Source of the DNA: Okamejei kenojei
Taxonomy: Eukaryota
Length of the DNA: 64,000 bases
Assembly: GCA_035221665.1 (NCBI GenBank)
Contig: CM069145.1
Location: 8,680,001-8,744,000 of the forward strand
Reading direction: 5' to 3'
Positions 4,500 through 61,958 of the stretch are shown here, in pieces; the first letter of the stretch is position 1, and the number at the start of each line of letters is the position of its first letter. The translations under genes were made by a program, and so were the position numbers. Under the pieces are notes generated by a model. It was not told the origin of the DNA. It searched no databases and saw nothing but the letters and a program-made list of their open reading frames with translations.

Positions 4500-5085
4500 T
4501 TCATAGAAACATAGAAAATAGGTGCAGGAGAAGACCATTTGGCCCATCGATTCATTGTGATCAAGGCTGATCATCCGCAATCAGTAACCTGTGCCTGCCT
4601 TCTCCCCATATCCCTTGAGTCCGCTAGCCCCTAGAGCTTTATCTAACTCTCTTTTAAATTCATTCAGTGAATTGGCTTCTACTGCCTTTTGTGGCAGAGA
4701 ATTCCACAAATTCATAACTCTTTTTCACATCTCAGTTTTAAATGGCCTCCCATTTATTCTTAAACTGTGGCCCCTGGTTCTGGACTCCCCCAACATTGGG
4801 AAATTTTTTCCTGCATCTAGCTTGTCCAGTCTTTTTATAATTTTATACATTTTTATAAGATGCCCTCTCATCCTTCTAAATTCCAGTGAATTACAATCTT
4901 TCCTCATATGACAGTCGCGCCATCCTGGGAATTAACCTCGTGAACCCATGCTGCACTGCCTCAAATAGCAAGGTTGTCCTTCCTCAAATTAGGAGACCAT
5001 AACTTCACTCAATACTTCAGATGTGGTCTCACCAGGGCCCTGTACAACTGCAGAAGGACCTATTTACTCCTATATTCAAATTTTC
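4500..5085 (-). mobile_element. CR1-clade LINE 3' fragment
   Basis: SLEFRRMRGHLIKMYKII..RTRGHSLRI on the minus strand; (catagaaa)n microsatellite tail at 4502. Confidence 0.88.
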
Positions 5086-22975: not shown

Positions 22976-25900
22976 AGACACCTTAAGGTCTTCACTACTT
23001 TATTAATCATACATCATATATAGCCCTAGCTGTACGTGGTCTGTCATGATCACTAGAGAGCGAGCTAGGGGCGTGTGGGTTACAATTATACTAACTGGTG
23101 GGGGGGTGGTTAGCATGGACATCGTCACTATCAATTAAAGGTGTATACACATATCATCTACATCCTTCCTCTACCAAAACAAACAGTGAGTGACAGGGCG
23201 ACCATGTCTCATGCGCTAGGGTAAATGCAAACAGTAAAGCACAGGAATACAGAATCACACGTAATCGCTGTAACGGACCGGCGGCCTGACCAGGCGACCA
23301 GACCGGGTCCGCACCTTGCCATCACCTCCTTCCCCGACGGAAACAAGCGGGGACGCCGGGGCATGGTGGGGGCTACGGACAGGAGAACCCCTTGGCGACG
23401 AAGGCATCGGGGTGGACGGCGAAGAGAAGGACGAGGAAGCCGGAGAAAGCCGCAGCCGGGAGGCGGACAGGAGGAGGACGAGGGGGGGTTGGCCCCAGAG
23501 GATCGGGCAAAGCACTGGGCCGCGACAGTGGCAGCGGGGGGGCATACGGAGCCGCCGGGGGAGGGAGAGGCTCGTTCATGAGCCGGAGATGCTGGTGGGA
23601 CCGGCGGTACACCCTTCCATCATGGTTGACAAGGTACGAACGAGGGGAACCGGCAGAACCGACGACCACGGCCAGCTTGGAATGGCCAGAAGTGGACCTC
23701 ATACGGACGACCTGGCCGGGGAGAAGAGGGCGGAGGACACGGCAGGACCTGTCGTGGGAACGCTTCTGGATACTGTGTTTTTGGGCAATGCGTTTCAGGA
23801 CCAAGGCAGGTTTAAAGACGGAGGGGGACAGGGACTGCTGAGACACCGGGACCATGGGCCTCGTGACTCGGGACATGAGTTGCTGAGCCGGGGAGCCCAG
23901 GGCATGGTCGCGGGAGATGTTGCAGAGGTTCAGCAGGGCCAGGTAGATGTCGGAGCGGGATAGGCGGCAACGTTCCAACAATCCTTTAGCACTGCGGACC
24001 GCGCGCTCGGCCAGTCCATTGCTCTGTGGGTATTCCGGGCTGCTGGTGTAATGACGAAAGTTCCATCGTTCGGCAAAAGCGCGGAATTCGGCACTGGTGA
24101 ACTGGCTGCCGTTGTCCGACTGCAGGCTGGCCGGAGACCCGAAGGTGGCAAAGTGGCGGCGCAACTTCTCGATGACCGCGGAGGAAGAGAGGGAGTGGAG
24201 CTGGTCAACTTCAAACCAGCTGGAGTAAGAGTCGACAAGCATCAGGAAGTGCTTTCCGTGCCATTCGAAGATGTCGGTTGCTAGCGCAGACCATGGCAGG
24301 TCAGCAGCTGGCTGCTGCAGGAGCGGCTGCCGCTGTTGCTGTGGAGCGAGGCTGTTACAGGTAGGGCACGCGGAGACCCTATCCCGGAAGTAGCGAGGCA
24401 TGTCAGGCCAGAAAAACTGGCTCTGAGCGACTGCAAGGGTCGCCTCGGCCCCGGGATGGCCACAATGAGCGGTTTCGAAGTATTGTTCTCGTAGTGCTGC
24501 GGGCACCACCACCTTGTGCCCCTTCACAATCACACCATCACGCAGCACCAACTCGTCACGAACCAAGAAGTAAGGCACCGCTGCGGCCGGCAGGGAAGAA
24601 CGGCGGTCTGGCCAGCCTGCTTGATGATCGCGGCCAGCTGCTGTAGCGAAGCGTCAGCCGCCGTGTGCTTGGCCAGGGACTTCAACTGACTGGAGGGCAC
24701 GAAGTTCACGCCCAGGACTATCAGATCGGACGTCTCGTACGGATGTCGGGTTGTGGATGAGAGAGGCGCCCAAGACAGCGTGTCAGCAACAAACATGTCC
24801 TTGCCCTTGCGATAAACCACTGTGAAAGTGCGGCGTTGTAGCTGGAGCATCATGCGCTGGAGCCGGGAGGAGGCCATGTGTATCGGCTTGTTGAGGATGG
24901 TGACCAGAGGCTGGTGGTCCGTCTCGACAGTGAAGCAGTTGCCCAGGATATAGTCTTTGAATTTGGAGCAGGCAAAGACAACAGCCAGCAGCTCTTCCTC
25001 AATCTGGGCATAGTGTTGTTCAGCGGTCATCATCGTGCGGGATGCGTAGGACACAGACAGTTGCACCCCGTCATGGATCTGCAGGCAGGCGGCCTCGAGG
25101 CCAAACTTAGATGCATCACATGTGAGAACGATGGGGCGCTGGAGGTCAAAGTACTTCAGCGTTGGCATGCTGATCAGCTTAGATTTGAGGGTGTCAAATG
25201 CTTTCTGGTGTTGCGGGAACCAGGCCCAGGCAGTGTCCTTTTTCACCAGATCCCGCAGAGGGGCACTCAGTTCGCTCAGGTCGGGGATGAACTTTCCCGG
25301 GTAGTTGACCATGCCCAAGAAGCGCTGTAGGCCAGGCACGTCAGCAGGTGCAGGCATCTCGGATATTGCGGCCGTCTTCTGCGGGTCGAGCTTCAGCCCC
25401 GATGCAGTGAAGACGTGCCCCACGTAGGTGACCTCAGGGACCCGGAATCGGCACTTCTTCGGGTTGAGCTTCAGGTTGACCTCCCGGGCCCGCTGCAGCA
25501 CCTGGCGAAGGTGGTGGTCGTGCTCAGCGACATTCTTCCCATAAACCAGGATGTCGTCGACAATGATGGCACACGGAAGTCCAGCAAACAGTTGTTCCAT
25601 GGTCCTTTGGAACACCTCACTGGCAGAGTTGATCCCAAACGGCATGCGGAGGAAGCGATACCTGCCGAAGGGCGTGCTGAAGGTCATCAGGTGCGAGGAT
25701 CGCTCGTCTAGAGGTATCTGCCAGAACAAACTCTTGGCATCAAGAACCGAGAACACGGTGGCAGGGCCGACCTGTGCAGCAACATCCTCCACCGTCCGCA
25801 TGGGATCGTGTGGGCGCCTGATGGCCAAGTTCAAGTCCTTAGGGTTGATGCGGATCTGTATTTCGCTCTTGTCTTTCTTCGCAGCGACAACCATAGTAGA

Positions 25901-26470
25901 AGCCCACCGGGTGGAGTCCGTTACTGGCTCCAGGATGCCTGTGGCCACCATCTCGCGAAGAGCAGACTCGACCTTGCCCCTCATGGCAAAGGACACGCGG
26001 TGCGGGGGACGGACGACCGGCGTGATGTCGGGATTGAGGGCAATCCTGTAGCTGCAGGGCAACTTCCCCAGCTTCGAGTCAAACCGGTCCGGGAATTCGG
26101 CCAGCGGGTTCAGGGGTGCCTCTACCAGGTGGACAACACTGTGGAAGCACACCAATCTGAGGTCCTGGCAGGCCTCCATGCCGAGCAGGGGGTCACATTT
26201 ACCGTCTAGCAGGAAGAAAGAGAGGGGCCGAGAGGTCTTCAGCACCTTGCAGTGGAGAGTGGCCCTCCCCACAGGAACAAGTACGCCACCCCCATAGGCA
26301 CGCAAAACAGCACTGTCTGTGGAAACGGGCTCATTATTTCTTATCTTCCTGAACAGGCTTGTTGACATAACATTAGCAGCAGCCCCCGTATCCACCTTAG
26401 CAGAGAAGGCCATGCCATTCACCGTGACTCGGACGGTCGGGTCCGTTATCAGAGCAGCTGCACCTCCCAC
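22976..26470 (-). mobile_element. Ty3/Gypsy LTR retrotransposon fragment: pol, PPT and partial 3' LTR; no gag or 5' LTR
   Basis: PR-RT-RH-IN domain order; PPT GGTAGAGGAAGGA followed by TGT at 23162; AATAAA at 22999-23004 on the minus strand. Confidence 0.93.
23373..24578 (-). CDS. Gypsy integrase (HHCC and D,D35E), frameshifted from pol
   Basis: AHCGHPG..CPTC; LATDIF, QSDNG, SNGLAERAV; C-terminal GQVVRM..PRSYLV..YRR. Confidence 0.85.
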   Translation of the reverse strand: MPYFLVRDELVLRDGVIVKGHKVVVPAALREQYFETAHCGHPGAEATLAVAQSQFFWPDMPRYFRDRVSACPTCNSLAPQQQRQPLLQQPAADLPWSALATDIFEWHGKHFLMLVDSYSSWFEVDQLHSLSSSAVIEKLRRHFATFGSPASLQSDNGSQFTSAEFRAFAERWNFRHYTSSPEYPQSNGLAERAVRSAKGLLERCRLSRSDIYLALLNLCNISRDHALGSPAQQLMSRVTRPMVPVSQQSLSPSVFKPALVLKRIAQKHSIQKRSHDRSCRVLRPLLPGQVVRMRSTSGHSKLAVVVGSAGSPRSYLVNHDGRVYRRSHQHLRLMNEPLPPPAAPYAPPLPLSRPSALPDPLGPTPPRPPPVRLPAAAFSGFLVLLFAVHPDAFVAKGFSCP

Positions 26471-26506
26471 AAGAATTTTAAATGTTTCTATAAGATCCCC
26501 TCTCAT
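24530..26506 (-). CDS. Gypsy pol: protease, reverse transcriptase, RNase H (first 12 aa are CR1-derived)
   Basis: VDTGA protease motif, LDAKS, RMPFG, IIVDDIL, RFLGMVNY, LTCDAS, VETDHQPL; frameshift near 24590-24630 before the integrase. Confidence 0.85.
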   Translation of the reverse strand: MRGDLIETFKILVGGAAALITDPTVRVTVNGMAFSAKVDTGAAANVMSTSLFRKIRNNEPVSTDSAVLRAYGGGVLVPVGRATLHCKVLKTSRPLSFFLLDGKCDPLLGMEACQDLRLVCFHSVVHLVEAPLNPLAEFPDRFDSKLGKLPCSYRIALNPDITPVVRPPHRVSFAMRGKVESALREMVATGILEPVTDSTRWASTMVVAAKKDKSEIQIRINPKDLNLAIRRPHDPMRTVEDVAAQVGPATVFSVLDAKSLFWQIPLDERSSHLMTFSTPFGRYRFLRMPFGINSASEVFQRTMEQLFAGLPCAIIVDDILVYGKNVAEHDHHLRQVLQRAREVNLKLNPKKCRFRVPEVTYVGHVFTASGLKLDPQKTAAISEMPAPADVPGLQRFLGMVNYPGKFIPDLSELSAPLRDLVKKDTAWAWFPQHQKAFDTLKSKLISMPTLKYFDLQRPIVLTCDASKFGLEAACLQIHDGVQLSVSYASRTMMTAEQHYAQIEEELLAVVFACSKFKDYILGNCFTVETDHQPLVTILNKPIHMASSRLQRMMLQLQRRTFTVVYRKGKDMFVADTLSWAPLSSTTRHPYETSDLIVLGVNFVPSSQLKSLAKHTAADASLQQLAAIIKQAGQTAVLPCRPQRCLTSWFVTSWCCVMV

Positions 26507-28592: not shown

Positions 28593-29693
28593 ATGACAGA
28601 GCGCACCAACATGGAGTCCAGGACAAAGTCCAAACGAGCCGCTGCCAAGATTGCTGCTGAGGACCGCGAAGGAGGCCGCCAGCAGCGGTCGAGTTCTCCA
28701 GAACTGCTGATACAAACTGTAGCCCCCGACTTCACGCCGCTACAGCCCGCAGGTGCTCCTCGGACTGGCGGCAAAACCACCTGGAAGTCGGACAGGTCCG
28801 TTGACTCGGCTGAGTTCGGGCTGGAGGACACCTCGCCCGCGGGAAGCGACAGTGCTCGACTATCCCGCATGGAGTGGATGGTGGAGCAGTTGCTCCAACG
28901 TGACCTGCTGCAGCAGGGGTATGGTCACAGTGGGTCTCTTAGCAGACCCACGGCAGCACCCTTTACAGGGCTGCCAAATGTCTCACCCTCCTTGCAGGGG
29001 AGCATAAGGAGTCAGAACTGGGCTGACTCTGAAGAGGGGAGTGTGGCTGAAGATACACCTATGCTAGGGGTGTCAGAAGAGGAGCTATTGGGAATGGTCA
29101 CGAAATTTGCAATGCCTACCCAAAAAGGGCTGCCGTTGCATCCAAAGTTGGCAGCCAGTATCAACTACATGGCAACAAACCAACTTCAAGAACAAGCCAT
29201 TAATGACACGGCAGCCAAATACTTAGCTCCGGAGAATTGTGTCTCCCTCAACGTGCCTGCTGTTAACAACCCCATTTGGGGTAACATGAGCCCTGGCATC
29301 AGGAGCCAGGAAGTGAAGCTCCAGAAGATTCTTAAACTACTGGCTGCTGGAATTACGGCCGTTGCCAGGTCAGTGGACGGAGTGGAAATGCCGGAAGAGC
29401 TACAGGATGCTCTAGCTCTCCTATGTAACACTCAGTATGAGATAAATAGATACAGGAAGGGTGTCATCCGGCCTGCACTGAACCCCAAGTTTGCGGGGTT
29501 GTGCAGACCCAGCAGTGCACAGCCGCCAACATTACTATTCGGGGACAACCTGCCTAAACAGGTAAAAGACCTCGATGAAGAGGCAAAGGCAATAGGCATG
29601 ATTAAGGTGCCGCCTGCCACCGTCTTCATACCAGCGGCGGCAGCACCCCTATGCATCCACCAGCAGACAACGCTACAACAGCTGAATTCTTAA
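28593..29693 (+). CDS. DIRS gag-like ORF1
   Basis: 366-aa ORF directly after the left ITR; PENC..L.VP.VN..IW and LLFGDNL are shared with the decayed gag of the second DIRS. Confidence 0.75.
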   Translation: MTERTNMESRTKSKRAAAKIAAEDREGGRQQRSSSPELLIQTVAPDFTPLQPAGAPRTGGKTTWKSDRSVDSAEFGLEDTSPAGSDSARLSRMEWMVEQLLQRDLLQQGYGHSGSLSRPTAAPFTGLPNVSPSLQGSIRSQNWADSEEGSVAEDTPMLGVSEEELLGMVTKFAMPTQKGLPLHPKLAASINYMATNQLQEQAINDTAAKYLAPENCVSLNVPAVNNPIWGNMSPGIRSQEVKLQKILKLLAAGITAVARSVDGVEMPEELQDALALLCNTQYEINRYRKGVIRPALNPKFAGLCRPSSAQPPTLLFGDNLPKQVKDLDEEAKAIGMIKVPPATVFIPAAAAPLCIHQQTTLQQLNS

Positions 29694-29816
29694 GACCACA
29701 TTCAAAAGGGGTAATTGAGAAAACCAAAAGAGAGTCTCATGAGTTTGTATCGAACATTTTCACTAAAAATAACATTTTCAAATCAATAAGACGGCGGATG
29801 CCGCGTCATTATTGAT

Positions 29817-31209
29817 TTGACAGAACTGAATACTTTTGTGCAGTATGCCCACTTCAAAATGGAAACTTTTGTCACTGCCAAACAACTAGTTTCCAAGAGG
29901 TACTTCATGGCTTGCATCGACCTAAAGGATGCATACTATTCAGTACCAATAGACAAGGGTCATCGCAGATATATAGCGCTGCCTAATGGATTATCATCAG
30001 CACCCAGACTGTTTACCAAATTATTAAAACCAGCTTTAGCGTGTCTCAGAAAACAAAAACATATTATTATGGCTTACCTCGATGACATTTTAATCGTGGG
30101 GAAAACCTTGGAGCTGGCCAAATTGGCTGTCTCAGCCACTGAGCACTTATTTCAAAAGCTGGGGTTTATCATCCACCCAGATAAATTAAAATCAATGCCT
30201 TCTAACACTATGCACTATTTGGGATTCACAATTGACTCTGTTCATATGTCTGTCACTTTGCCACGGAACAAAGCGTCAGACTTGATAGAAGCATGCAACA
30301 GCCTTACTGGCATCAGGAAATTGTCGATTCGGCAAGTAGCCAGGGTGATTGGGAAGCTTGTGGCTGCTGTCCCAGCCACACAATTTGGGCCACTGCATTA
30401 CCAAAACCTACAAAGGGCAAAAATAGCAGCGCTCAAGCACCATGTGGGCCATTTTGACAGGCCAATGTAATTACCAGGGAAAGTAAAATTGGAATTACAA
30501 TGCTCGACATTGCTCTAACCCCATCACAATCACAAATCCCTCGGTTATACTACAAACTGATGCCAGCGCACAAGGCTGGGGAGCAACTAATACCACCTCC
30601 AGTTGCGGTGGTAGATGGAATGCACATGAATTAACCCTACTCCCGGCACTGGGAATTAATTATTTAGAAATGCTGGGAGCATTTCATGGACTCGGGGCTT
30701 ACTGTTCGGTCATGCACCATCTGCACGTACGCTTACAAATTGATAATACCACTGTGGTGGCTTATATCAATCATATGGGTGGAATAAAGTCGATATCCTG
30801 TGACGAATTGGTCAATACAATCTGGCACTGGTGCCTAGAAAGGAGCATTTGGATATCAGCCACTTACCTTCCAGGTAGGCTAAATACAGTGGTGGACACC
30901 AGGTCACGCACGTTTAATGACAACACCGAATGGATGTTGGACCGCAAAGTGTTTGTCGATATTATAGATCGGTATGGAACACCAGATATCGACATTTTTG
31001 CATCCAGACTTAATCACCAAATATCAACATATGTTGCATGGGAACCAGACCCTGGGGCAGTAGTGATGGACGCTTTCTCGCTACACTGGGGGGATTTGTT
31101 TTTCTATGCATTTCCCCCTTTCTGCCTCATCAGTCGGGTCTTGCAAAAAATTAAACAAAACACCGCATTGGGTATTCTGGTTGTGCCCGACTGGCCTATT
31201 CAACCATAG
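29817..31209 (+). pseudogene. DIRS RT-RNaseH-adenine methyltransferase-like ORF, disrupted
   Basis: HFKMET, IDLKDAY, LPNGLSSAPRLFTK, AYLDD, IDNTTVVAYINHMGG, DIFASRLN, YAFPPF, VVPDWP. Confidence 0.88.
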
Positions 31210-35655: not shown

Positions 35656-38600
35656 CCTCATCACAGTTATGAAAATATTGAAGCCCGATATCTAGTTTTT
35701 CTTGTGCTCAACAGAAATATTACTAATAGGGAAAATTTAGTTTGTAAGGTAATATTTAGTTGAACAAATAATGATACTGTTAAGCAAGCCAAGTGCTTAC
35801 TGAAGGCATTTGGAAAGTAAATGCCAGACAATTATGTAAAGTCTATTTAATTGTTGATAGACTTTTGCATTTTAATTACTTCTGAGAGCAATTTCATCTA
35901 TTCAATTGGATTTCAGTTTGATTCATAAAAAATAAATGATCTACTGACCAGAAATGAATCCATTTGACCTTTAGTTAGTCAAAATTAACTTCCAATGATT
36001 GGAATAGAAAAAAAACATGAAAAGATTCTATTAAGATTGAAAGCCTTTTCAGAGAACATAACATGATGTTATGCGGAAAGAATTTTAAATATTTTAAAGG
36101 CAAGTTGTTGATAAAATATTTACCAAAACTGAACTTTGGAACTGTTGGAAAATAAATTGCTGCAGCCAAGGAAGTAGTTTAATAATGTCAAAGGTTTGAT
36201 AACGATAAGAGTGATTCATAATAAATCTCTGCAAAGCAGGGGCTAAATTGGGACTGCACCTTCAGACTATTTAAAGGCTCCATTAGATTATTTTTTTCTG
36301 ACCACGCTGAGTTGCAACTGTACATTAGTTTGACCCCACCTTCATCCGACAGCCTTTTTCTAAACAGGCTCTAATTTAACATTTAAAATTGCTTTCATCA
36401 CAAGAGTCCTTACTGGGAACCAAACACCAGTGATAGCAACTGAAATTGGCAAACACAGGCCCAACTTGCCCACAACATGTCCCAGCTACACTAGTCCCAC
36501 ATGCCTGCATTTGGTTCCATATCCCTCCAAACCTGTCCTATCCATGTACCTGTCTAACTGTTTCTTAAACATTGGGATAGTCTCAGCCTCAACTATCTTC
36601 CCTGGCAGCTTGTTCCATGTCCCCACCACACTTTTTGCGAAAAAGTTACCCCTCAGATTCCTATTAAATTTTTTCCCCTTCACCTTAAATCCATGTCCCC
36701 TGGTCCTCGATTCAAGTTCATGGAGTTATACCTGCAAAAACCAGCCGCACGCAATGTCTCCGTAGCCTATTATGCCTTGGAAATTCAAATGCTCATTCAG
36801 ATTATCTTAAGTCTTGAAGATAAAAACTAAATGTAGCGTGACTCAGCTGGACAGACGGCATAGAACGATTGGGTGACGATTCTGGTCGAGACACTTCCTC
36901 AGTGTTGGAGTACATAACTTCACCAACCCCTCAGGCACAGCAGCTCAGATTGCAAGCACCCTTTCGATTAATGAAATATCTTCCACAGCTCCCCTCCATG
37001 TTGCTAATTCCTCTGCTTATGCCTTCTGGTTTTAGATACCAAAACCATGGGGAACAGCTTCTCACTATCTTACCTTTGGGCCAATGAGTCCTACCTTAAT
37101 CAGAGGAACATGACATGTCATCTCGGGCTGATTTGGTAGCACTCCAGCTTCTCAATCAGGAGATTGTGTTGAAGTGCCCATTCTGGGCACTAGCCACGAA
37201 AATAGTAAGATTAAACGAGAACTTACCAGTTTGAAGTTTGATCTTTATTTTATGAGGAGTCGAGTTGAGGGACTACGTGAATAGAAGCCCGTACAGCCGT
37301 TGGTGCGTCAATCTTCAAAGCAGCGGAATGAATTCACAGCTAACAATGACCGAAGTATAACGGTAAGATGATAAAACTAGAACTACCAGATGAGATCTAT
37401 GAGGGTGGGAGCGGAGGGCACGTAGTCCCTCAACTCGACTCCTCATAAAATAAAGATCAAACTTCAAACTGGTAAGTTCTCGTTTAATCTTACTATTTTA
37501 CTTCGGAGTCACGTGAGTGACTACGTGAAGACTTCAAAGCACTGAATTCACGCCGCAGACTCAAATCCGACGTTCACACTGCCTGGATTGACTCAAAAGT
37601 CGTTAACAATCAATCATGCATCAGTAATACATTTGTTAAATGAAATAACAGTTTATTTACAAACAAATCATAACAAACCCCTCTAACTCAGGGGAAAAGT
37701 GTAACTGTACTGAACCAGAATCAGCAAACACCCCAAGCCTTAAAATCGGCTTGTGATAAAACCTCTGAAAAGTTAGCTCACTGGACCATCCTGCGGCCAC
37801 GAGGACATGGTCTATTGGCAAGTCCATCGCCCTTGCCGCGGAAGTTGATGCCGCCCTGGTGGAATGAGATTTGAATTTATCAGTATCAATTCCAGCACTT
37901 GCCATGACCTGCTTTAGCCACCTTGAAATCGTTTGCACCGACACCTTACTGTGTGGTTTTTTGTGACTAATAAACAAAGCCAACTCTGTTCCTCTCAGAG
38001 GTTTAGTAATCTCAATGTAACGAGATAAATGTGAGACTACACAGAAGCGATCATCTGCGGGGTATGCTGAAAACACAATCTTACATCCTGTCATGCCTCT
38101 TTTATTATGTTTAAGCAAATCATAGACATAAAATATAATGGCATCAGCCGACACATGCATTCTATCTAGCCGTAGCTTTTGCAACATTTATACACGTTGA
38201 GCTGAAACCAACGCCATAAGCATGACCACCTTCATAGATAATTTGGCTACTGATAGGCTTGTAACCGGAGCCCACTGGCAAAGAACCATAAAAACCTCAC
38301 TCACATTCCAAATACCGGCATACCTGGGTTTAGGAGGATTAAAATTGAAAAACTCCCTTCATGAATCGTGAAACTAACGGATGTGTCCCTACTGTATGCA
38401 ATTCTGCATTCCTAGGTAAATAAGAAGACAGAGCACTTCTGGCTGAATTAATCGCACTGTAACTTAATTTTTTGGTCAAAATAAAGAGTTGACAAACTCT
38501 AATACATCCGTGATCCCTGCAGTGTGATATACAATATTCTGCTGTAGGCAGAATTGCTCCCACTTCCTTATATAGGTGATATATTGCCGCTGTGTACTAT

Positions 38601-45930: not shown

Positions 45931-46659
45931 ACATAGAAATGTAGAAACATAGAAAATAGGTGCAGGAGTAGGCCATTCGGCCCTTCGAGCCAGCACTGCA
46001 ATTCGATATGATCATGGCTGATCATCTGGAATCAGCACCCTGTTCCTACTTTCTCCCCATATCCTTTGATTCCGTTAAAGGCTAGGCTGTTGTACTGGCA
46101 CCATGGCACAAACATTTGAAATGTATGTGAGATTAGGTAAAGGAGCACTAGATTCCTTTTACACATTATGCAATTAATTTTTATCACAAACACTGAGCTC
46201 ATTCCTTGTATTCTGGTCACAGAATCAGTTCTAGATCCTCTGTGCAATGAAGATGCTTATTCACAAAAGCCCCCAGATATTGGAGGAACCACCTAATGCA
46301 GACAATGTGTTAACCTCCTCATTCCTGGGATCATTCTTGTAAACTTCCTCTGGGCCCTCTCCAGAGCCAGCACATCTAGTGAAAAGTCACCTCTCAGGAA
46401 GTGATGGCTGAGCATAGAACATAGAATATAAAACAGTCCAGCACAGCACAGGAATGGGCCCTTCGGCCCACAATGTTCATGCCTAACCTACCTGAACTGA
46501 TTAAATCTGCCTGCACATAATCCATATCCCTCTATTGCCTACGGAAGGATATAATAAACGAGGAAACAATGGACCACCCTCATCTCAACTGTGTTGGTAT
46601 TCAGCTTCCAATATTCCAAAAAATCTTTCCTACTCTATAATTCCTACTCTGCAGCTCAC

Positions 46660-46809
46660 TTCTTCTTCCTCTTCTTCTTCCTTCATGTGGCATGCACAGT
46701 CTAAAGTTGTTGGACAACTTGTTCTATTTGATCTTCCGTTTGTGCACGTCGAGTTGATTGCATTAGTCGAAGCAGGGCGGACCACGTGAAGGTTGCAATC
46801 GTCCACCCT
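46660..46809 (-). mobile_element. ~150-bp retroposed SINE-like element with HDV-like ribozyme head and (GAA)n tail
   Basis: TSD AGCTCAC at 46653-46659 and 46810-46816; (TTC)n tail at 46660-46684 on +; no tRNA A/B boxes. Confidence 0.8.
46756..46809 (-). ncRNA. Minimal HDV-like self-cleaving ribozyme (54 nt)
   Basis: Minus strand AGGGTGG-AC-GATTGCA-ACC-TTCACGT-GGT-CCGCCCT-G-CTTCGA-CTAA-TGCAATC = P1 (7 bp), J1/2, P2 (7 bp), P3 (3 bp), L3 (7 nt), P3', P1', P1.1 G, minimal P4, J4/2 with catalytic C, P2'. Confidence 0.82.
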
Positions 46810-46907
46810 AGCTCACCTCTCATTGCTTCTGAAAGCCATAACCACTGTCTACACTCAAACTGCCACAGGATTTGCACCAAGTAGGCCAGCTGCTACTGAG
46901 GGACACA

Positions 46908-47115
46908 ATGTGTAGGAAGGAACTGCAGATGCTGGTTTAAACCGAAGGTAGACACAAAATGCTGGAGTAACTCAGCGGGGCAGGCAGCATCTCTGGATAG
47001 AAGGAATGGGTGTCGAGACCCATCTTCAGTCTGAACCCGAAACGTCACCCATTCCTTCTATCCAGAGATGCTGCCTGTCCCACTGAGTTCCTCCAGCAAT
47101 TTGCGCCTATCTTCA
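46908..47115. mobile_element. Inverted pair of Penelope-like repeats with TSD-like flanks
   Basis: Palindromic arms; ACTGAGGGACA occurs on both flanks (~46895 and ~47116). Confidence 0.8.
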
Positions 47116-55262: not shown

Positions 55263-55819
55263 AGGCCCTGTCCCACTTACGAGTAATTTGGCATGCAAAT
55301 TACGCGACCTCGTCATCGCGTTGAGGCACACGGGCATAGTGTGGCCGCGCTGGGCCGATCCCACTGAGAAGCGTGGAGGGGTATGGAGTTGCGCGTGGTA
55401 TCGCGCGGCGCTCTAAAATGTTGCTGCGAATTAAATCTTTGCGCGCCACCGGCCTGTCGCATAACTGACGGCCAAAGTGGGACAGGCCCAAGACCCTGAT
55501 ACAATGAAATGTCTCACCTCCAACAGCAGCAGAAGCAGGCAAACGATCGCGAATGGAAGATGTTTCGGGTCAAGACCCTTCTTTCAGATTGAAGAAGGGT
55601 CTCGACCCGAAACATCACCCATTCCTTCTCTCCAGAGATGCTGCCGGTCCCTCTGAGTTACTCCGGCATTTTGTGTCCATTTTCAAATGACGTCACGCGC
55701 TCCAAACGGCTGTGCAGACGCATGAAGTCACGCGTGACCTTCGCGGGACTGTCGTGCCTCAACGTGACCACGAGGTCACGTAATTAGCGTGCCAAGGACA
55801 CGTAAGTGTGTCAGGGGCT
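55263..55819. mobile_element. PIF/Harbinger-type MITE with internal TIR copy and nested PLE repeat (~55553-55685)
   Basis: AGGCCCTGTCCCACTTACG / CGTAAGTGTGTCAGGGGCT with ~65-bp inverted arms; internal AGTGGGACAGGCCC near 55476. Confidence 0.8.
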
Positions 55820-58311: not shown

Positions 58312-60065
58312 TGTATATTACTAAAAGTAAGACCTTGACCACTTCCTGTTTTCCTGTTTCATGATTTTTGAAAAAACGGCTATGATTGTTGGCCATCTTA
58401 CTCAGTCCCCATCCGCTGCGCAGGACAATAAGAATGTTCCTATCGATGAAAAATAAAAGAGTTATTAATGTTTAAAAAATGTTGACATTCTCGCTGTTGC
58501 CCCTGCTGGTGGGAGGGGAAAGGAACTATAAAACCCGGAAGTGTTGTGCCGCACTCAGTCTGTGCAAGATGGAGGAAGCGAGAGTCTTGATGGAGGAAGC
58601 GAGAGTCAAGATGGAGGAAGCGAGACCCTTGCTCACGTCTCTCGGAGCATAACACTGAATACATGTCTACTCAACTGTGAGTGCCCTTAATGTGGTTTGA
58701 AAATGAAAATGTGGTTGCATTGAAAATGGTTGTTGGTGGTAGTAACTACTTTGAAATGCTGCACTGCAAACGGTTGTTGGTGGTGGCAACGGCTTTGAAA
58801 TGCTGCACTGCAAACGGTTGTTGGTGGTGGTAACTTGACAACATCCTGTTTGCACTGTATATTGATTTTAGATAAAACGCTACCACTTACGGCTGTGATT
58901 TTTGGCCATCTTACTCAGCCCCCCTCCGCTCATCAGGTGCAGAGGATTCTTCCCATCAATGAAAAATAAAAGTGTTATTAGTGTTAAATGTTGAGAATCT
59001 CTCTCCTGTCAATCACGCCATGAAAGCTACGCCCCTTCCGGTGGGAGGGGGTAGTGATTATAAAACCCAGAAGTGTGGGTGTGGCTCAGTCTCTGCAAGA
59101 TGGGGGAGGGAGAGGTCACGACTCTGTCTGAGCTGTGAATCAACTGAAATCACTGAATGTCTACTGAACTGTGAGTGTGGTGTTTATGCGTGTTTTGTGT
59201 GGTTTTATGGTGGTTTATGGTAGTTTCACCCTGCTTGAAATGGTATGAAACTGCATTTGAATTTGGTGATCTTGCACCCTACATGAAATGGTATGAAACT
59301 GCACTTGAATTTGGTGGTCTTGCACCCTGCTTGAAGTGGTCGGAAAATACACTTGGATTTGGTGGCCTTGCACCCTGCTTGAAGTGGCATGAAACTGCAC
59401 TTGAGTGGTGGCCCTGCACCCTGCTTGAAGTGGTAGGAAAGTGCACTTGAGTTCGCTCGCCCTGCACCCTGCTTGAAGTGGTAGGAAACTGCACATGAAT
59501 TTGGTGGCCTTGCACCCTGCTTGAAGTGGTATGAAACTGCACTTGAATTCGGTGACCTTGCACCCTGCTTGATGTGGTAGGAAACTGCAACTGAATTTGG
59601 TGGCCTTGCATTCTGCTTGAAGTGGTATGAAACTGCAATTTAATTTGGTGGCCTTGCACCCTGCTTGAAGTGGTAAGAAACTGCACTTGAATTTGGTGGC
59701 CTTGCACCCTGCTTGAAATGGTAGGAAACTGCATTTGAATTTGGTGGCCTTGCACCCTGCTTGAAATGGAATTTCAAGGAATAGCCGTGAGTCAACTGCT
59801 CGCCCACCAGCCGTGAGTGAGCTGCCAGCACATCAGGCTTGAGTGACTGAGCTGTCACCCAAAGAATCCATTTGGCCCACAATGTCCATACTAGCTCTCT
59901 GGAAACCAGTCCCTTCAGCCCTCAATACCCATACTAGCGCTCCAGAAAGCCCCCCCCCCCCCCAACTGGCCATCAATATTAGAATTGGTAGAGAGGTGGA
60001 ATATTGCGTTGGGGGACCAGCCCTCCGATGTTAACATGGGACCCAACGGGTCCCACTTAGTCTAG
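58312..60065 (+). mobile_element. Non-autonomous Helitron 1
   Basis: 5' A|TGTATATTACTAAAAG (TC mutated to TG); 3' hairpin TGGGACCC-AAC-GGGTCCCA then CTTAGTCTAG|T; no TSD. Confidence 0.82.
59227..59769. repeat. 48-bp minisatellite, about 11 copies, inside Helitron 1
   Basis: CACCCTGCTTGAAGTGGTA(G/T)GAAACTGCACTTGAATTTGGTGGCCTTG units; 16-aa periodicity in the ORF track. Confidence 0.95.
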
Positions 60066-60067
60066 TA

Positions 60068-61958
60068 TCTATATACTTTTGAAACTCTGTGTGTGTGTGG
60101 GTGTATGTCATTTTTCATTTTGCCTTTGATTTTGCCTTTGATTTGTTACTCCGCAAAAACCAGACGCAAAAGCGCCGAGATTTTTACCTTTTACATTCGC
60201 AAATCCACTCCTTATTAAATTTAGTCATTTTTCTGTACACATTTTTAATAAAATCCTTCACAAAACCTACTAAATTCTTTGAATCAGCGGGTGCCGACGT
60301 CACAATGCCCTTATGCTTGTGGCACCGCCACCCGCTCTCTATTCACGAAGACGCTGTGATCGCACTTTCAATCACCCCCCCCACCCCATTCAGTCATTTT
60401 TTCGCCTCCCGCTGGCCACATTCTTATTGCGTGCCCCGCATGACGATAACGGCTACTGCCGCCCGGCTCTCCACCACTATCCCTCTCCCCCCCCCCGGCC
60501 TGGCTCTGTAACGCTGGCGGAAGCCACAGATTGGCTGGTACCCCCTGCTGCTTTTCGCCGTCCCATCTGGTGGACTCGGGATCATGCCCGCCCACTCCGC
60601 CTGCCCACTCTGCCCGCTCCAACCACCCCCCCTCCCCGTACTCGGGGTCTGAAGCGCCGAGGATGCGAGGCCATGGAGCTGAGGCTCATTCTGAGGCCGA
60701 CGGCTGCTGGGCGGCCCCATCCTTCTACTCCCTCCCTTCTTCCCCCTCCCTTCTCCCCTCCCCTCTCTCCCCTCCACCCTTTCTCCCCCTCCCCTCTCTC
60801 CCCCCTCGCTCTCTCCCCCCCTCTCTCTCTCTCTCCCCCCTCTCTCTCGATCGGCCGGCCATCTGCTGCTTTTGATCAACCGCCCTGCTCGCACCAGCAG
60901 GGTCGCCCGCTCAAAAAAATGCCGCAAATCGGAAACCCCAGCTCCAAAAGGCAGGAAGTTCCCCTGCCTCTGTGTCCCTCTCTGTGTGTCCCTCTCTGTG
61001 TGTCCCTCTCTGTGTGCCTCCATTACCCTCTCTGTGTGTGCCTCCATGTCCCTCCGTGACCCTCTCTGTGTGGCTTTGTGCTCCTCTCTGTGTGGCTCCG
61101 TGCCCCTCTCTGTGTGCCTCTGTGTGCCTCTGTGTCCTTCTCTGTGCCTCCGTGTCCTTCTCTGTGCCTCCGTGCCCCTCTCTGTGTGCCTCCATGCCCC
61201 TCTCTGTGCCCCTCTCTGTGCCTCTGTGTCCTTCTCTGTGCCTCCGTGTCCTTCTCTGTGCCTCCGTGTCCTTCTCTGTGCCTCCGTGCCCCTCTCTGTG
61301 TGCCTCCGTGACCCTCTCTGTGTGCCTCCGTGACCCTCTCTGTGTGCCTCCGTGACCCTCTCTGTGTGCCTCTGTGTCCCTCTCTGTGCCTCCGTGTCTC
61401 CCCCTCTGTGCCTCCGTGTCTCCCCCTCTGTGCCTCCGTGTCTCCCCCTCTGTGCCTCCGTGTCTCTCTCTGTGCCTCTGTGTCTCTCTCTGTGCCTCTG
61501 TGTCTCTCTCTGTGCCTCTGTGTGTCTCTCTCTGTGCCTCCGTGTCTCTCTCTGTGTGCCTCCGTGTCTCTCTCTGTGTGCCTCTGTGTCCCTCTCTGTG
61601 CCTCCGTGTCTCTCTCTGTGCCTCCGTGTCTCTCTCTGTGCCTCTGTGTCTCCCTCTCTGTGCCTCTGTCTCCCTCTCTGTGCCTTCGTCTCCCTCTCTG
61701 TGCCTCCGTCTCCCCCTCCGTGCCTGCGAATTGGGGGCTATATGTGAGTGGATAGGGCAGGGCATGGGGTAAAAGGAGTGAATTAATAATATTAATATAA
61801 TATCAATGGGGGTGGTTAGTGTGTGTGTGTGAGGGGTGGTTAGCTTGTATGTGTGTGTGAAAGGTTGGTTATTGTGTGTGTGTGATGCCTCAGGCCACCC
61901 CCTCCCCTCGCAACTGTGCGTTGAAGGAACAGACCCAACGGGTCTGCACTTGGTCTAG
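60068..61958 (+). mobile_element. Non-autonomous Helitron 2
   Basis: 5' A|TCTATATACT; 3' hairpin CAGACCC-AAC-GGGTCTG (61930-61946) then CACTTGGTCTAG|T; inserted between A and T. Confidence 0.87.
60965..61722. repeat. Complex CT/GT-rich micro/minisatellite inside Helitron 2
   Basis: Variants of CTCTGTGCCTCCGTGTC(TC)n. Confidence 0.95.

What the first reader, a model, noticed from the sequence alone, without database searches (positions are those of the whole stretch)
46653..46816. Candidate ribozyme-headed SINE: minimal HDV-like ribozyme exactly at the 5' end of a 150-bp TSD-flanked retroposon
Seen: the minus strand 46809-46756 folds into a nested double pseudoknot with P1 AGGGTGG/CCGCCCT (7 bp), P2 GATTGCA/TGCAATC (7 bp), P3 ACC/GGT, L3 TTCACGT, a near-absent P4 (CTTCGA) and J4/2 CTAA (putative catalytic C at 46766). 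It is followed by ~70 nt and a (GAA)n tail, with TSD AGCTCAC on both sides. The first P1 base, which is the HDV cleavage position, is the first base inside the TSD. Known: HDV-like ribozymes process the 5' ends of R2, RTE and L1Tc non-LTR retrotransposons, and short internally deleted R2 derivatives keep them. Inference: this is a promoterless non-autonomous family that cuts itself out of read-through transcripts and is retroposed by a LINE with a GAA tail (RTE-like). I do not know of a described elasmobranch family of this type. Position +1 is A rather than the usual G and may be a mutation in this copy.
Basis: partly seen in the sequence, partly recalled or inferred. Interest (0 to 1): 0.9.

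Follow-up and report, generated by a model that had tools for sequence, protein, structure and literature searches.

The report
Ribozyme-headed mini-retroposon, high-copy family
This 150-bp insert is one recent copy of a very abundant short mobile element whose first 54 bases fold like a minimal hepatitis-delta-type self-cutting RNA; this probably gives the element its exact 5' end without a promoter, a trick known from insect and trypanosome elements, and the papers I could search describe none in sharks or rays.

Summary
On the minus strand, 46809-46756 fits the HDV-like nested double pseudoknot: P1 7 bp, P2 7 bp, P3 3 bp, L3 UUCACGU, J4/2 CUAA, and almost no P4. My descriptor found it once in the window and never in 2,539 shuffled windows.

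- **Rfam:** the top two hits on the 76-nt stretch are HDV-family models (CPEB3 27.3 bits, below the threshold of 35).
- **Independent relatives:** two metagenome contigs carry the same core with a canonical G1·U wobble and two compensatory pair changes in P2.
- **Family:** public reads from four organisms show a huge family. Summed depth is about 10^6, against 10-50 in the flanks.
- **Fixed 5' end:** similarity stops at 46807-46810, the predicted cleavage site.
- **Insertion:** contigs from three related organisms carry the precise empty site, joining 46652 to 46810 with one copy of the 7-bp target duplication.

So this is a recent retroposition of a ribozyme-headed, non-autonomous non-LTR element. 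Other first-stage notes report the same element elsewhere in this genome.

Self-cleavage, the partner LINE (RTE is only a guess) and the lack of a promoter remain untested. This copy deviates at +1 (A) and at J1/4 (C38). Mechanistically it is a known kind (R2 SIDEs, NARTc); the minimal ribozyme, the vertebrate host and the copy number are new.

The parts
46810..46816 (-). Target-site duplication, copy upstream of the element (AGCTCAC on +, GTGAGCT on -)
   Evidence: The empty-site contigs keep only one copy.
46803..46809 (-). P1 5' strand AGGGUGG. Position +1 (46809) is the predicted cleavage site and the first base of the insert.
   Evidence: the CPEB3 model aligns its G1 to 46809. Family similarity ends at 46807-46810.
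46794..46800 (-). P2 5' strand GAUUGCA (J1/2 AC at 46802-46801)
   Evidence: Two compensatory pair changes relative to L001/L002.
46781..46793 (-). P3 (ACC/GGU) enclosing L3 UUCACGU. L3 C at 46788 pairs with G 46773 as a one-pair P1.1.
   Evidence: (L3 identical to the Rfam CPEB3 consensus).
46774..46780 (-). P1 3' strand CCGCCCU
   Evidence: 46778 C>T (+ strand) in about 14% of family copies turns U5.G32 into U5-A32; it is also a CpG site.
46767..46773 (-). J1/4 G plus a 6-nt linker CUUCGA in place of P4. 46772 is C in this copy but U in about 99.5% of family copies.
   Evidence: (table 3).
46763..46766 (-). J4/2 CUAA; putative catalytic C at 46766
   Evidence: invariant in all three sequences.
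46756..46762 (-). P2 3' strand UGCAAUC
46683..46755 (-). 73-nt body / 3' domain of the family, presumed to be recognised by the partner reverse transcriptase. The predicted hairpins are no better than chance.
   Evidence: same high depth as the ribozyme part; z -0.54.
46660..46682 (-). (GAA)n-type microsatellite tail; it is part of the insert
   Evidence: Absent from the empty-site contigs.
46653..46659 (-). Target-site duplication, copy downstream of the tail

Best explanation
This is one recent copy of a very abundant, roughly 140-150-nt non-autonomous non-LTR retroposon. It fits the types called 'bipartite non-autonomous LINE' or SIDE rather than a pol III SINE. Its first 54 nt are a minimal, P4-less HDV-like (delta-like) self-cleaving ribozyme. 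The likely cycle is as follows. A copy lying in any transcribed region is read through as part of a longer RNA. The ribozyme cleaves just 5' of its own first nucleotide, so the released RNA starts exactly at +1 and keeps the whole ribozyme. The 3' domain and (GAA)n tail are used in trans by a LINE reverse transcriptase for target-primed reverse transcription. The cDNA runs to the cleaved 5' end, producing full-length copies flanked by short target duplications. Each daughter copy again carries the 5'-processing signal and needs no promoter. Shown here: the fold, its conservation, the family, the fixed 5' end, the TSD and the empty site. Inferred: catalysis, read-through transcription and the identity of the LINE.
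For: - Fold and chance: (0 hits in 2,539 shuffles against 1 observed).
- Of 4,227 Rfam families, the two best hits on the 76-nt stretch are both HDV-family ribozymes. CPEB3 scores 27.3 bits (E 5.6e-6 for that stretch) with its G1 aligned to 46809; HDV-F-prausnitzii scores 14.1 bits.
- L001 and L002 were found with a 21-nt pattern covering only P3, L3, the P1 3' strand and the following G. Outside the pattern they also carry a matching P1 5' strand with a G1.U wobble, CUAA, and a different but fully complementary P2.
- In the three-sequence alignment 54 of 54 pair cells are standard pairs, with 2 pairs changed on both sides and 3 on one side. Slid controls pair at 28-48%.
- Family and 5' end: depth is 0.5-1.5 million over 46688-46817, against 14-25 in 46818-46895 and 0-8 in 46558-46661 (run X1). 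Depth is roughly even along the element, so most copies are full length. Long contigs stop matching at 46807-46810.
- Insertion: records 9, 16 and 23 (organisms D, B, C) are collinear across 46652|46810 with 2-3% flank divergence. X1 record 4 spans the filled junction with 0 mismatches.
- No tRNA-like head and no small-RNA family hit.
- Precedent: R2 SIDEs (PMC3414825), NARTc/SIDER (PMC3383444, PMC4035085), ribozyme-bearing bipartite non-autonomous LINEs (PMC5786205) and the review PMC6765202.
Against: - No cleavage data.
- The Rfam score is below the gathering threshold.
- This copy has A1-U instead of the G1.U wobble and a private U38>C change, so this particular copy may be a poor ribozyme.
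- P1.1 is a single pair and P4 is essentially missing.
- Within-family covariation could not be measured. Only three sites vary at 10% or more, and the one inside a helix (46778) is a CpG transition.
- With three sequences the covariation statistics are weak (54 of 500 shuffles reach the observed values).
- No partner LINE was found.
- In L001/L002 similarity continues about 283 nt upstream of the ribozyme, so there it is not at a repeat's 5' end.
Confidence: 0.8

Rival explanations
1. It is an ordinary promoter-driven SINE (pol III or pol II). The fixed 5' end is then a transcription start, and the HDV-like drawing of the head is incidental and non-catalytic.
For: SINE families also have sharp 5' ends, TSDs and LINE-type tails, so alone does not discriminate. 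A TTCGA motif at 46771-46767 loosely resembles a B box (read from the sequence). The Rfam score is below threshold.
Against: ARAGORN finds no tRNA-like structure. Rfam gives no tRNA, 5S, 7SL or snRNA hit at E<=10, and there is no A-box match. The full HDV descriptor is expected in fewer than about 1 in 1,000 windows yet starts exactly at base 1 of the insert. The same fold recurs with compensatory P2 changes in an unrelated sequence context.
Confidence: 0.08
2. The head has two roles, as Pr77/L1TcRz does in trypanosomatid L1Tc and NARTc. The same roughly 55 bp would be an internal promoter at the DNA level and a ribozyme at the RNA level, so the element would not be promoterless.
For: There is precedent (PMC3383444, PMC8190864). 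The very high copy number would be easier to reach with an internal promoter than by depending on read-through alone.
Against: Nothing in the sequence was identified as a promoter, and no expression data were obtained. Other ribozyme-headed elements (R2, RTE, Baggins) are described as promoterless (PMC6765202).
Confidence: 0.1
3. It is a retro-copy of a host transcript fragment released by a cellular HDV-like ribozyme (a processed-pseudogene-like event), not a dedicated mobile element.
For: A ribozyme-cleaved host RNA would also yield a copy starting at +1.
Against: Copy number is on the order of 10^4-10^5 with uniform boundaries. The tail is a microsatellite rather than poly(A). The element is present at similar abundance in four organisms.
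Confidence: 0.02
4. The motif is a chance match in unique sequence.
For: Helices alone occur about 18 times per window.
Confidence: 0.01

Closest known systems
R2 SIDEs (short internally deleted R2 elements, Drosophila; PMC3414825)
   Same: They are non-autonomous and keep the 5' HDV-like ribozyme that sets the exact 5' end, plus the 3' end needed for TPRT by the parent's protein.
   Different: R2 SIDEs are rDNA-site-specific, low-copy, several hundred nt long, and clearly derived from a known parent with a full-size ribozyme. The element here is dispersed, has 7-bp TSDs, is about 140 nt, is very high copy and P4-less, and its parent is unknown.
NARTc / SIDER with L1TcRz-Pr77 (trypanosomatids; PMC3383444, PMC4035085)
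   Same: They are dispersed, abundant non-autonomous partners of a LINE, with an HDV-like ribozyme in the first ~77 nt.
   Different: Their head is also a proven promoter. The host uses polycistronic transcription. The ribozyme sequence is unrelated, and the tails are poly(A).
RTE/Baggins drz and 'bipartite non-autonomous LINEs' (Ruminski 2011 as cited in PMC6765202; Kojima 2018, PMC5786205)
   Same: The architecture is a LINE 5' end (with a predicted ribozyme) fused to a LINE 3' end. The elements are promoterless and co-transcribed.
   Different: No RTE (or other LINE) sharing either end was found here. Assigning the (GAA)n tail to RTE is unverified.
Mammalian CPEB3 ribozyme (Rfam RF00622)
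   Same: It is the best Rfam hit. L3 UUCACGU is identical. The family consensus has GU after P1, as in the model's flanking consensus. P1.1 is a weak one-pair helix, and J4/2 follows C-N-A-A.
   Different: CPEB3 is single-copy, intronic and reported only in mammals (PMC2950038), and it has a real P4. The score here is 27.3, below the threshold of 35. P1 and P2 sequences are unrelated.
Minimal P4-less delta-like ribozymes (drz-Mtgn, theta ribozymes; PMC10879173)
   Same: They have the same reduced architecture, with P4 replaced by a few nucleotides.
   Different: They are reported almost only in bacteriophages and metagenomes (about 99%), in tRNA-linked contexts. Here the host is a vertebrate retroposon.
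Hammerhead-bearing Sm-alpha SINEs of Schistosoma and twister-variant LINEs (PMC6765202, PMC8501958)
   Same: A short retroposon family carries a self-cleaving ribozyme used for processing.
   Different: The ribozyme class is different, the elements are pol III transcribed, and the cleavage geometry differs.

Membership tests
HDV-like (delta-like) self-cleaving ribozymes | Nested double pseudoknot: P1 (6-7 bp) starting at the cleavage site, with P2 crossing P1 and P3 nested inside | tested here: met
   7+7+3 bp, all standard pairs, in the window copy and in L001/L002.
HDV-like (delta-like) self-cleaving ribozymes | Catalytic C in J4/2 followed by purines that dock on P3 | tested here: met
   CUAA at 46766-46763 is invariant in the three sequences and aligned to the model's J4/2. 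Catalytic role not assayed.
HDV-like (delta-like) self-cleaving ribozymes | Conserved 7-nt L3 and P1.1 between L3 and J1/4 | tested here: met
   L3 UUCACGU equals the Rfam CPEB3 consensus. One C-G P1.1 pair is kept in 3 of 3 sequences. The second P1.1 pair is absent, as I recall for CPEB3.
HDV-like (delta-like) self-cleaving ribozymes | G1.U wobble at the cleavage site | tested here: not met
   This copy has A1-U36. L001 and L002 have G1.U. The family consensus at +1 could not be read.
HDV-like (delta-like) self-cleaving ribozymes | P4 helix | tested here: not met
   Only 6-7 nt lie between P1 and J4/2. This matches the 'minimal drz' subtype (PMC10879173).
HDV-like (delta-like) self-cleaving ribozymes | Score above a curated Rfam family threshold | tested here: not met
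   CPEB3 27.3 bits against 35; HDV-F-prausnitzii 14.1 against 44. Nothing appears in the wider 1.5-kb scan. The models are not pseudoknot-aware and expect a P4.
HDV-like (delta-like) self-cleaving ribozymes | Site-specific, divalent-metal-dependent self-scission giving 5'-OH and 2',3'-cyclic phosphate | not testable with these tools
   Needs in vitro transcription and cleavage assays.
Ribozyme-terminated non-autonomous non-LTR retroposon (SIDE / NARTc / bipartite non-autonomous LINE type) | The family's 5' boundary coincides with the ribozyme cleavage site | tested here: met
   depth falls from about 5x10^5 to about 25 between the bins ending at 46817 and 46843. Pieces inside long contigs end at 46807-46810.
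Ribozyme-terminated non-autonomous non-LTR retroposon (SIDE / NARTc / bipartite non-autonomous LINE type) | Insertion by TPRT: TSD, 3' tail, and an orthologous empty site | tested here: met
   7-bp TSD and (GAA)n tail. Empty-site contigs in three organisms (records 9, 16, 23).
Ribozyme-terminated non-autonomous non-LTR retroposon (SIDE / NARTc / bipartite non-autonomous LINE type) | No coding capacity of its own | tested here: met
   The element is 150 nt. One frame is open by chance, but nothing is homologous to it.
Ribozyme-terminated non-autonomous non-LTR retroposon (SIDE / NARTc / bipartite non-autonomous LINE type) | An autonomous LINE in the same genome shares the 3' end (and possibly the 5' ribozyme) | not tested
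   No such LINE lies in the 64-kb window. The genome itself could not be searched.
SINE in the strict sense (pol III head from tRNA, 5S, 7SL or snRNA) | Head derived from a small RNA with an internal pol III promoter | tested here: not met
   ARAGORN finds none. There are no Rfam small-RNA hits.
Mammalian CPEB3 ribozyme family (RF00622) | Score at or above the gathering threshold, a P4, and a single-copy location in the CPEB3 intron | tested here: not met
   27.3 bits is below 35. There is no P4, and the element is a dispersed high-copy repeat.

The most novel reading that the evidence does not exclude
The minimal ribozyme may be a portable, sequence-frozen 5' module shared by very distant animals. 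The family subtype with A at position 32 differs from the core in an unidentified contig source of 31-32% GC (L001/L002) by a single extra U, while P2 has been rebuilt by compensatory changes. That would imply either horizontal transfer of a ribozyme-headed retroposon lineage or an ancient LINE-borne module. The mammalian CPEB3 ribozyme shares the same L3, a GU after P1 and a one-pair P1.1, so it could be an exapted, P4-bearing relative of such a vertebrate retroposon head.
Probability: 0.15. Interest if true: 0.8.

Novelty: new variant of a known kind. Interest (0 to 1): 0.6.

Why it matters
**Minimal delta-like ribozymes.** P4-less delta-like ribozymes have so far been reported almost only in phages and metagenomes, and their function in eukaryotes is undetermined (PMC10879173). 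This element would give them a clear eukaryotic role.

**Vertebrate context.** In the papers I could reach, the vertebrate cases named are the mammalian CPEB3 ribozyme and lamprey hits. I found no paper linking HDV-like ribozymes to shark or ray repeats.

**A natural mutational data set.** A family of 10^4-10^5 copies is a large natural mutational series for the HDV fold.

**Persistence without a promoter.** It shows how a roughly 140-nt element can thrive with only a 5' self-processing signal and a 3' recognition tail.

**Cost to the host.** If the consensus is active, every sense-oriented copy inside an intron or UTR is a potential self-cleavage site in a host transcript. This predicts a strong antisense bias of copies within genes and possible effects on host gene expression. 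Both predictions can be tested directly from the assembly and from RNA-seq.

**Annotation.** Repeat libraries should label this family as ribozyme-headed rather than as a SINE of unknown head.

Tried and rejected
- **Rfam over 1.5 kb and over L001/L002:** no HDV-family hit. Only the 76-nt scan with laxer filters showed the CPEB3 and HDV hits.
- **Other copies in the window:** blastn and a covariance model with filters off found only this copy. That is compatible with the estimated density.
- **Fetching family copies through spurious ORFs:** one frame of the element is open, but the search for homologous proteins returned nothing. I could therefore build no multi-copy alignment from this genome and measure no within-family covariation. 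The consensus base at +1 also remains unknown.
- **Genome-contig scan:** the single hit, in Brevibacterium (L003), has no P1/P2 context and about 4 such hits are expected by chance, so I rejected it.
- **Viral-contig scan:** no hit.
- **3' domain hairpins:** no better than shuffled sequence, so I make no structural claim there.
- **Partner LINE:** the window has only one (CTT)n tract. The LINE-like RT at 28.6-31.2 kb and the Gypsy at 23.3-26.5 kb share nothing with the element.
- **46778 variant:** it changes U.G to U-A in 14% of copies, but I do not count it as evidence for selection because it is a CpG transition.
- **Joint 46808>46909:** the table gives no information on what lies between, so I do not interpret it.
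- **Papers not held:** Ruminski 2011 (JBC) and Webb & Luptak 2011 could not be read. What I say about them comes from papers that cite them.
- **Copy number:** derived from summed contig depth, which is crude by the tool's own warning.

Full report
**1. What is in the sequence**

Read on the minus strand, the 150 bp from 46809 down to 46660 have four parts: a 54-nt head, a 73-nt body, a (GAA)n-type tail (46682-46660), and a 7-bp direct repeat on both sides. The repeat is AGCTCAC on the + strand, at 46653-46659 and 46810-46816.

| Element | Sequence (minus strand) | Coordinates |
|---|---|---|
| P1 | AGGGUGG / CCGCCCU | 46809-46803 / 46780-46774 |
| J1/2 | AC | 46802-46801 |
| P2 | GAUUGCA / UGCAAUC | 46800-46794 / 46762-46756 |
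| P3 | ACC / GGU | 46793-46791 / 46783-46781 |
| L3 | UUCACGU | 46790-46784 |
| Linker in place of P4 | G + CUUCGA | 46773-46767 |
| J4/2 | CUAA (C at 46766) | 46766-46763 |

The coordinates and base pairs are correct.

**2. Is the fold more than chance?**

I wrote a descriptor and ran it on both strands of the window and on first-order Markov shuffles.

- Helices alone are common: 22 observed, about 18 expected.
- Requiring C-N-R-A just before the P2 3' strand leaves 1 observed against 0.4 expected.
- Also requiring the L3 motif Y-Y-C-N-C-G leaves 1 observed against 0 in 2,539 shuffled windows.

This motif starts at the very first base inside the target duplication, a coincidence with a per-position probability far below 10^-6.

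Rfam gives an independent view. Over 1.5 kb nothing HDV-like passes the filters. On the 76-nt stretch, however, the two best of 4,227 families are both HDV-family ribozymes:

- CPEB3_ribozyme scores 27.3 bits (threshold 35, E 5.6e-6 for that stretch). The model's G1 aligns to 46809 and its L3 is identical.
- HDV-F-prausnitzii scores 14.1 bits.

These models are not pseudoknot-aware and expect a P4, which is missing here. Nested-only folding cannot see the pseudoknot and gives no signal.

**3. Independent relatives and covariation**

I scanned the metagenome collection with a 21-nt pattern covering only P3, L3, the P1 3' strand and the G that follows it. It returned two contigs, L001 and L002 (31-32% GC, so not this genome).

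Outside the pattern both contigs have:

- a matching P1 5' strand with the canonical G1.U wobble;
- the same CUAA;
- a linker one U longer;
- a P2 of different sequence that is again fully complementary.

Counting the pseudoknotted structure on the three-sequence alignment gives 54 of 54 cells as standard pairs. Two P2 pairs are changed on both sides and three pairs on one side, while slid controls pair at 28-48%.

With three sequences the shuffle statistics are weak (54 of 500 shuffles reach the observed values). The pattern is still what a real helix predicts.

In L001/L002 similarity continues about 283 nt upstream of the ribozyme. There the ribozyme is internal to a repeat of roughly 450 bp.

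**4. Family, fixed 5' end and empty site**

I laid contigs from four public runs, labelled as four different organisms, on 46350-47100 at 80% likeness. Three results follow.

*(a) A very large family.* Positions 46688-46817 carry summed depths of 0.5-1.5 million in X1. The unique flanks carry 0-25. The profile is similar in all four runs. Depth is roughly even along the element, so most copies are full length. The tail was masked by the tool.

From the depth ratio, and from one copy per 64 kb, I estimate 10^4-10^5 copies. This is crude, because the tool warns that summed depth is not a copy number.

*(b) A fixed 5' end.* In contigs that continue for 300-1,000 nt, the match stops at 46807, 46808, 46809 or 46810. 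That is the predicted cleavage site.

*(c) An insertion with an empty site.* Records 16 (X3), 23 (X5) and 9 (X10) run collinearly from 46543-46652 straight into 46810-46930/46950. They skip exactly 157 bp, which is the element plus one TSD copy. Their flanks differ from the window by 2-3%. X1 record 4 covers the filled junction 46779-46921 without a mismatch.

So this is a true insertion, younger than the split of organism A from B, C and D.

*Variants in the family.*

- 46772 is A on the + strand in about 99.5% of copies. The family therefore has U38, giving GU after P1, and this copy carries a rare C.
- 46778 C>T, in about 14% of copies, converts U5.G32 into U5-A32. It is a CpG site, so I do not count it as evidence for selection.
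- The base at +1 in the family could not be read. Five of the seven listed pieces stop at 46807 or 46808. That fits most copies having another base there (G, as in L001/L002), but it is only a hint.

At least ten other first-stage notes describe the same 131-143-nt HDV/CPEB3-headed element on other pieces of this genome. They are unchecked, but they agree with the read evidence.

**5. What it is not**

- ARAGORN finds no tRNA-like head.
- Rfam finds no 5S, 7SL, snRNA or tRNA similarity.
- No second copy and no diverged ribozyme lie in the window.
- The single bacterial hit of the core pattern is a chance match.
- The element encodes nothing.

**6. Mechanism**

The best-supported reading is the one established for R2, RTE/Baggins and L1Tc, and for their non-autonomous derivatives (PMC3414825, PMC3383444, PMC6765202, PMC5786205):

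1. A copy is transcribed as part of a longer RNA.
2. The HDV-like ribozyme cuts immediately 5' of its own first nucleotide.
3. The RNA therefore begins at +1 and retains the ribozyme.
4. A LINE reverse transcriptase recognises the 3' domain and tail and copies the RNA into a staggered nick.
5. The cDNA ends at the cleaved 5' end.

This explains the full-length copies, the sharp boundary at +1, the TSD and the tail.

Catalysis, read-through transcription and the partner LINE are inferences. 'RTE-like' rests only on a recalled tail type, and nothing here tests it. A dual promoter-ribozyme head, as in Pr77, is not excluded.

This particular copy (A1, C38) may itself be a weak ribozyme.

**7. Comparison and novelty**

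The kind is known. The new features are these:

- The ribozyme is a minimal, P4-less delta-like ribozyme. That subtype has been reported almost only from phages and metagenomes, with an undetermined eukaryotic role (PMC10879173).
- The host is a jawed vertebrate. The papers I could reach mention vertebrate HDV-like ribozymes only for CPEB3 in mammals and for lamprey (PMC2950038, PMC8256844). No paper in the library links HDV-like ribozymes with shark or ray repeats.
- The whole element is only about 140 nt, yet it reaches a very high copy number.

I could not consult Repbase or Dfam. The repeat itself may therefore already have a library entry without the ribozyme having been noticed. Ruminski 2011 and Webb & Luptak 2011 were not available to me.

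**8. Verdict**

This is a new variant of a known kind. Interest is moderate to high, mainly for three reasons: it is a natural minimal HDV-like ribozyme system in vertebrates, it implies thousands of potential self-cleavage sites in host transcripts, and it shares a nearly identical ribozyme core with a distant AT-rich organism, which remains unexplained.

Noticed in passing
window 46896-47100 (hairpin about 46966-47091): A palindromic, MITE-like repeat lies 100 bp from the element. It is 10-20 times more abundant than the ribozyme family in all four runs (summed depth up to 2x10^7 in X1 and 5x10^7 in X3), with many strand-switch joints. It gives spurious sub-threshold hits to plant and viral miRNA precursor models in Rfam. 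A related arm occurs near 55554-55640.
   Followed up: partly
window 46413-46557: A medium-copy repeat (depth 10^4-10^5) ends in a (CATAGAA)n tract at 46413-46435. The tract resembles, from memory, the octamer-repeat tails of CR1-type LINEs; similar tracts lie at 4502, 22619 and 45930.
   Followed up: no
L001 (about 744-1191) and L002 (316-752): Two metagenome contigs of 31-32% GC (JACSEG01...) carry almost the same ribozyme core with a canonical G1.U wobble. There it is embedded in a ~450-bp repeat that is 77% identical between the contigs and extends ~283 nt upstream of the cleavage site. The ~60 nt after the ribozyme recur ~355 nt upstream in L002 without a ribozyme. The source organism is unknown, and horizontal transfer or an ancient module are both possible.
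   Followed up: partly
window 23373-26506 (-), 28593-31209 (+), 37657-38187 (-): There is a Gypsy-type pol (protease, RT, RNase H, integrase), a LINE-like RT fragment, and an ORF with a weak tyrosine-recombinase (Phage_integrase) match that would fit a DIRS- or Crypton-like element. None shares sequence with the ribozyme element.
   Followed up: no
window 59227-59769 and 61047-61725: Two tandem arrays: a 48-bp unit repeated about 11 times, and a 20-22-bp CT-rich unit repeated about 30 times.
   Followed up: no
window 46808 joined to 46909 in other loci (table 5): In 9-19 contigs per run, the 5' end of a ribozyme-element copy and the start of the palindromic repeat are reported as one joint, with unknown letters between. 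This could be chance proximity of two very abundant repeats or an insertion preference.
   Followed up: no
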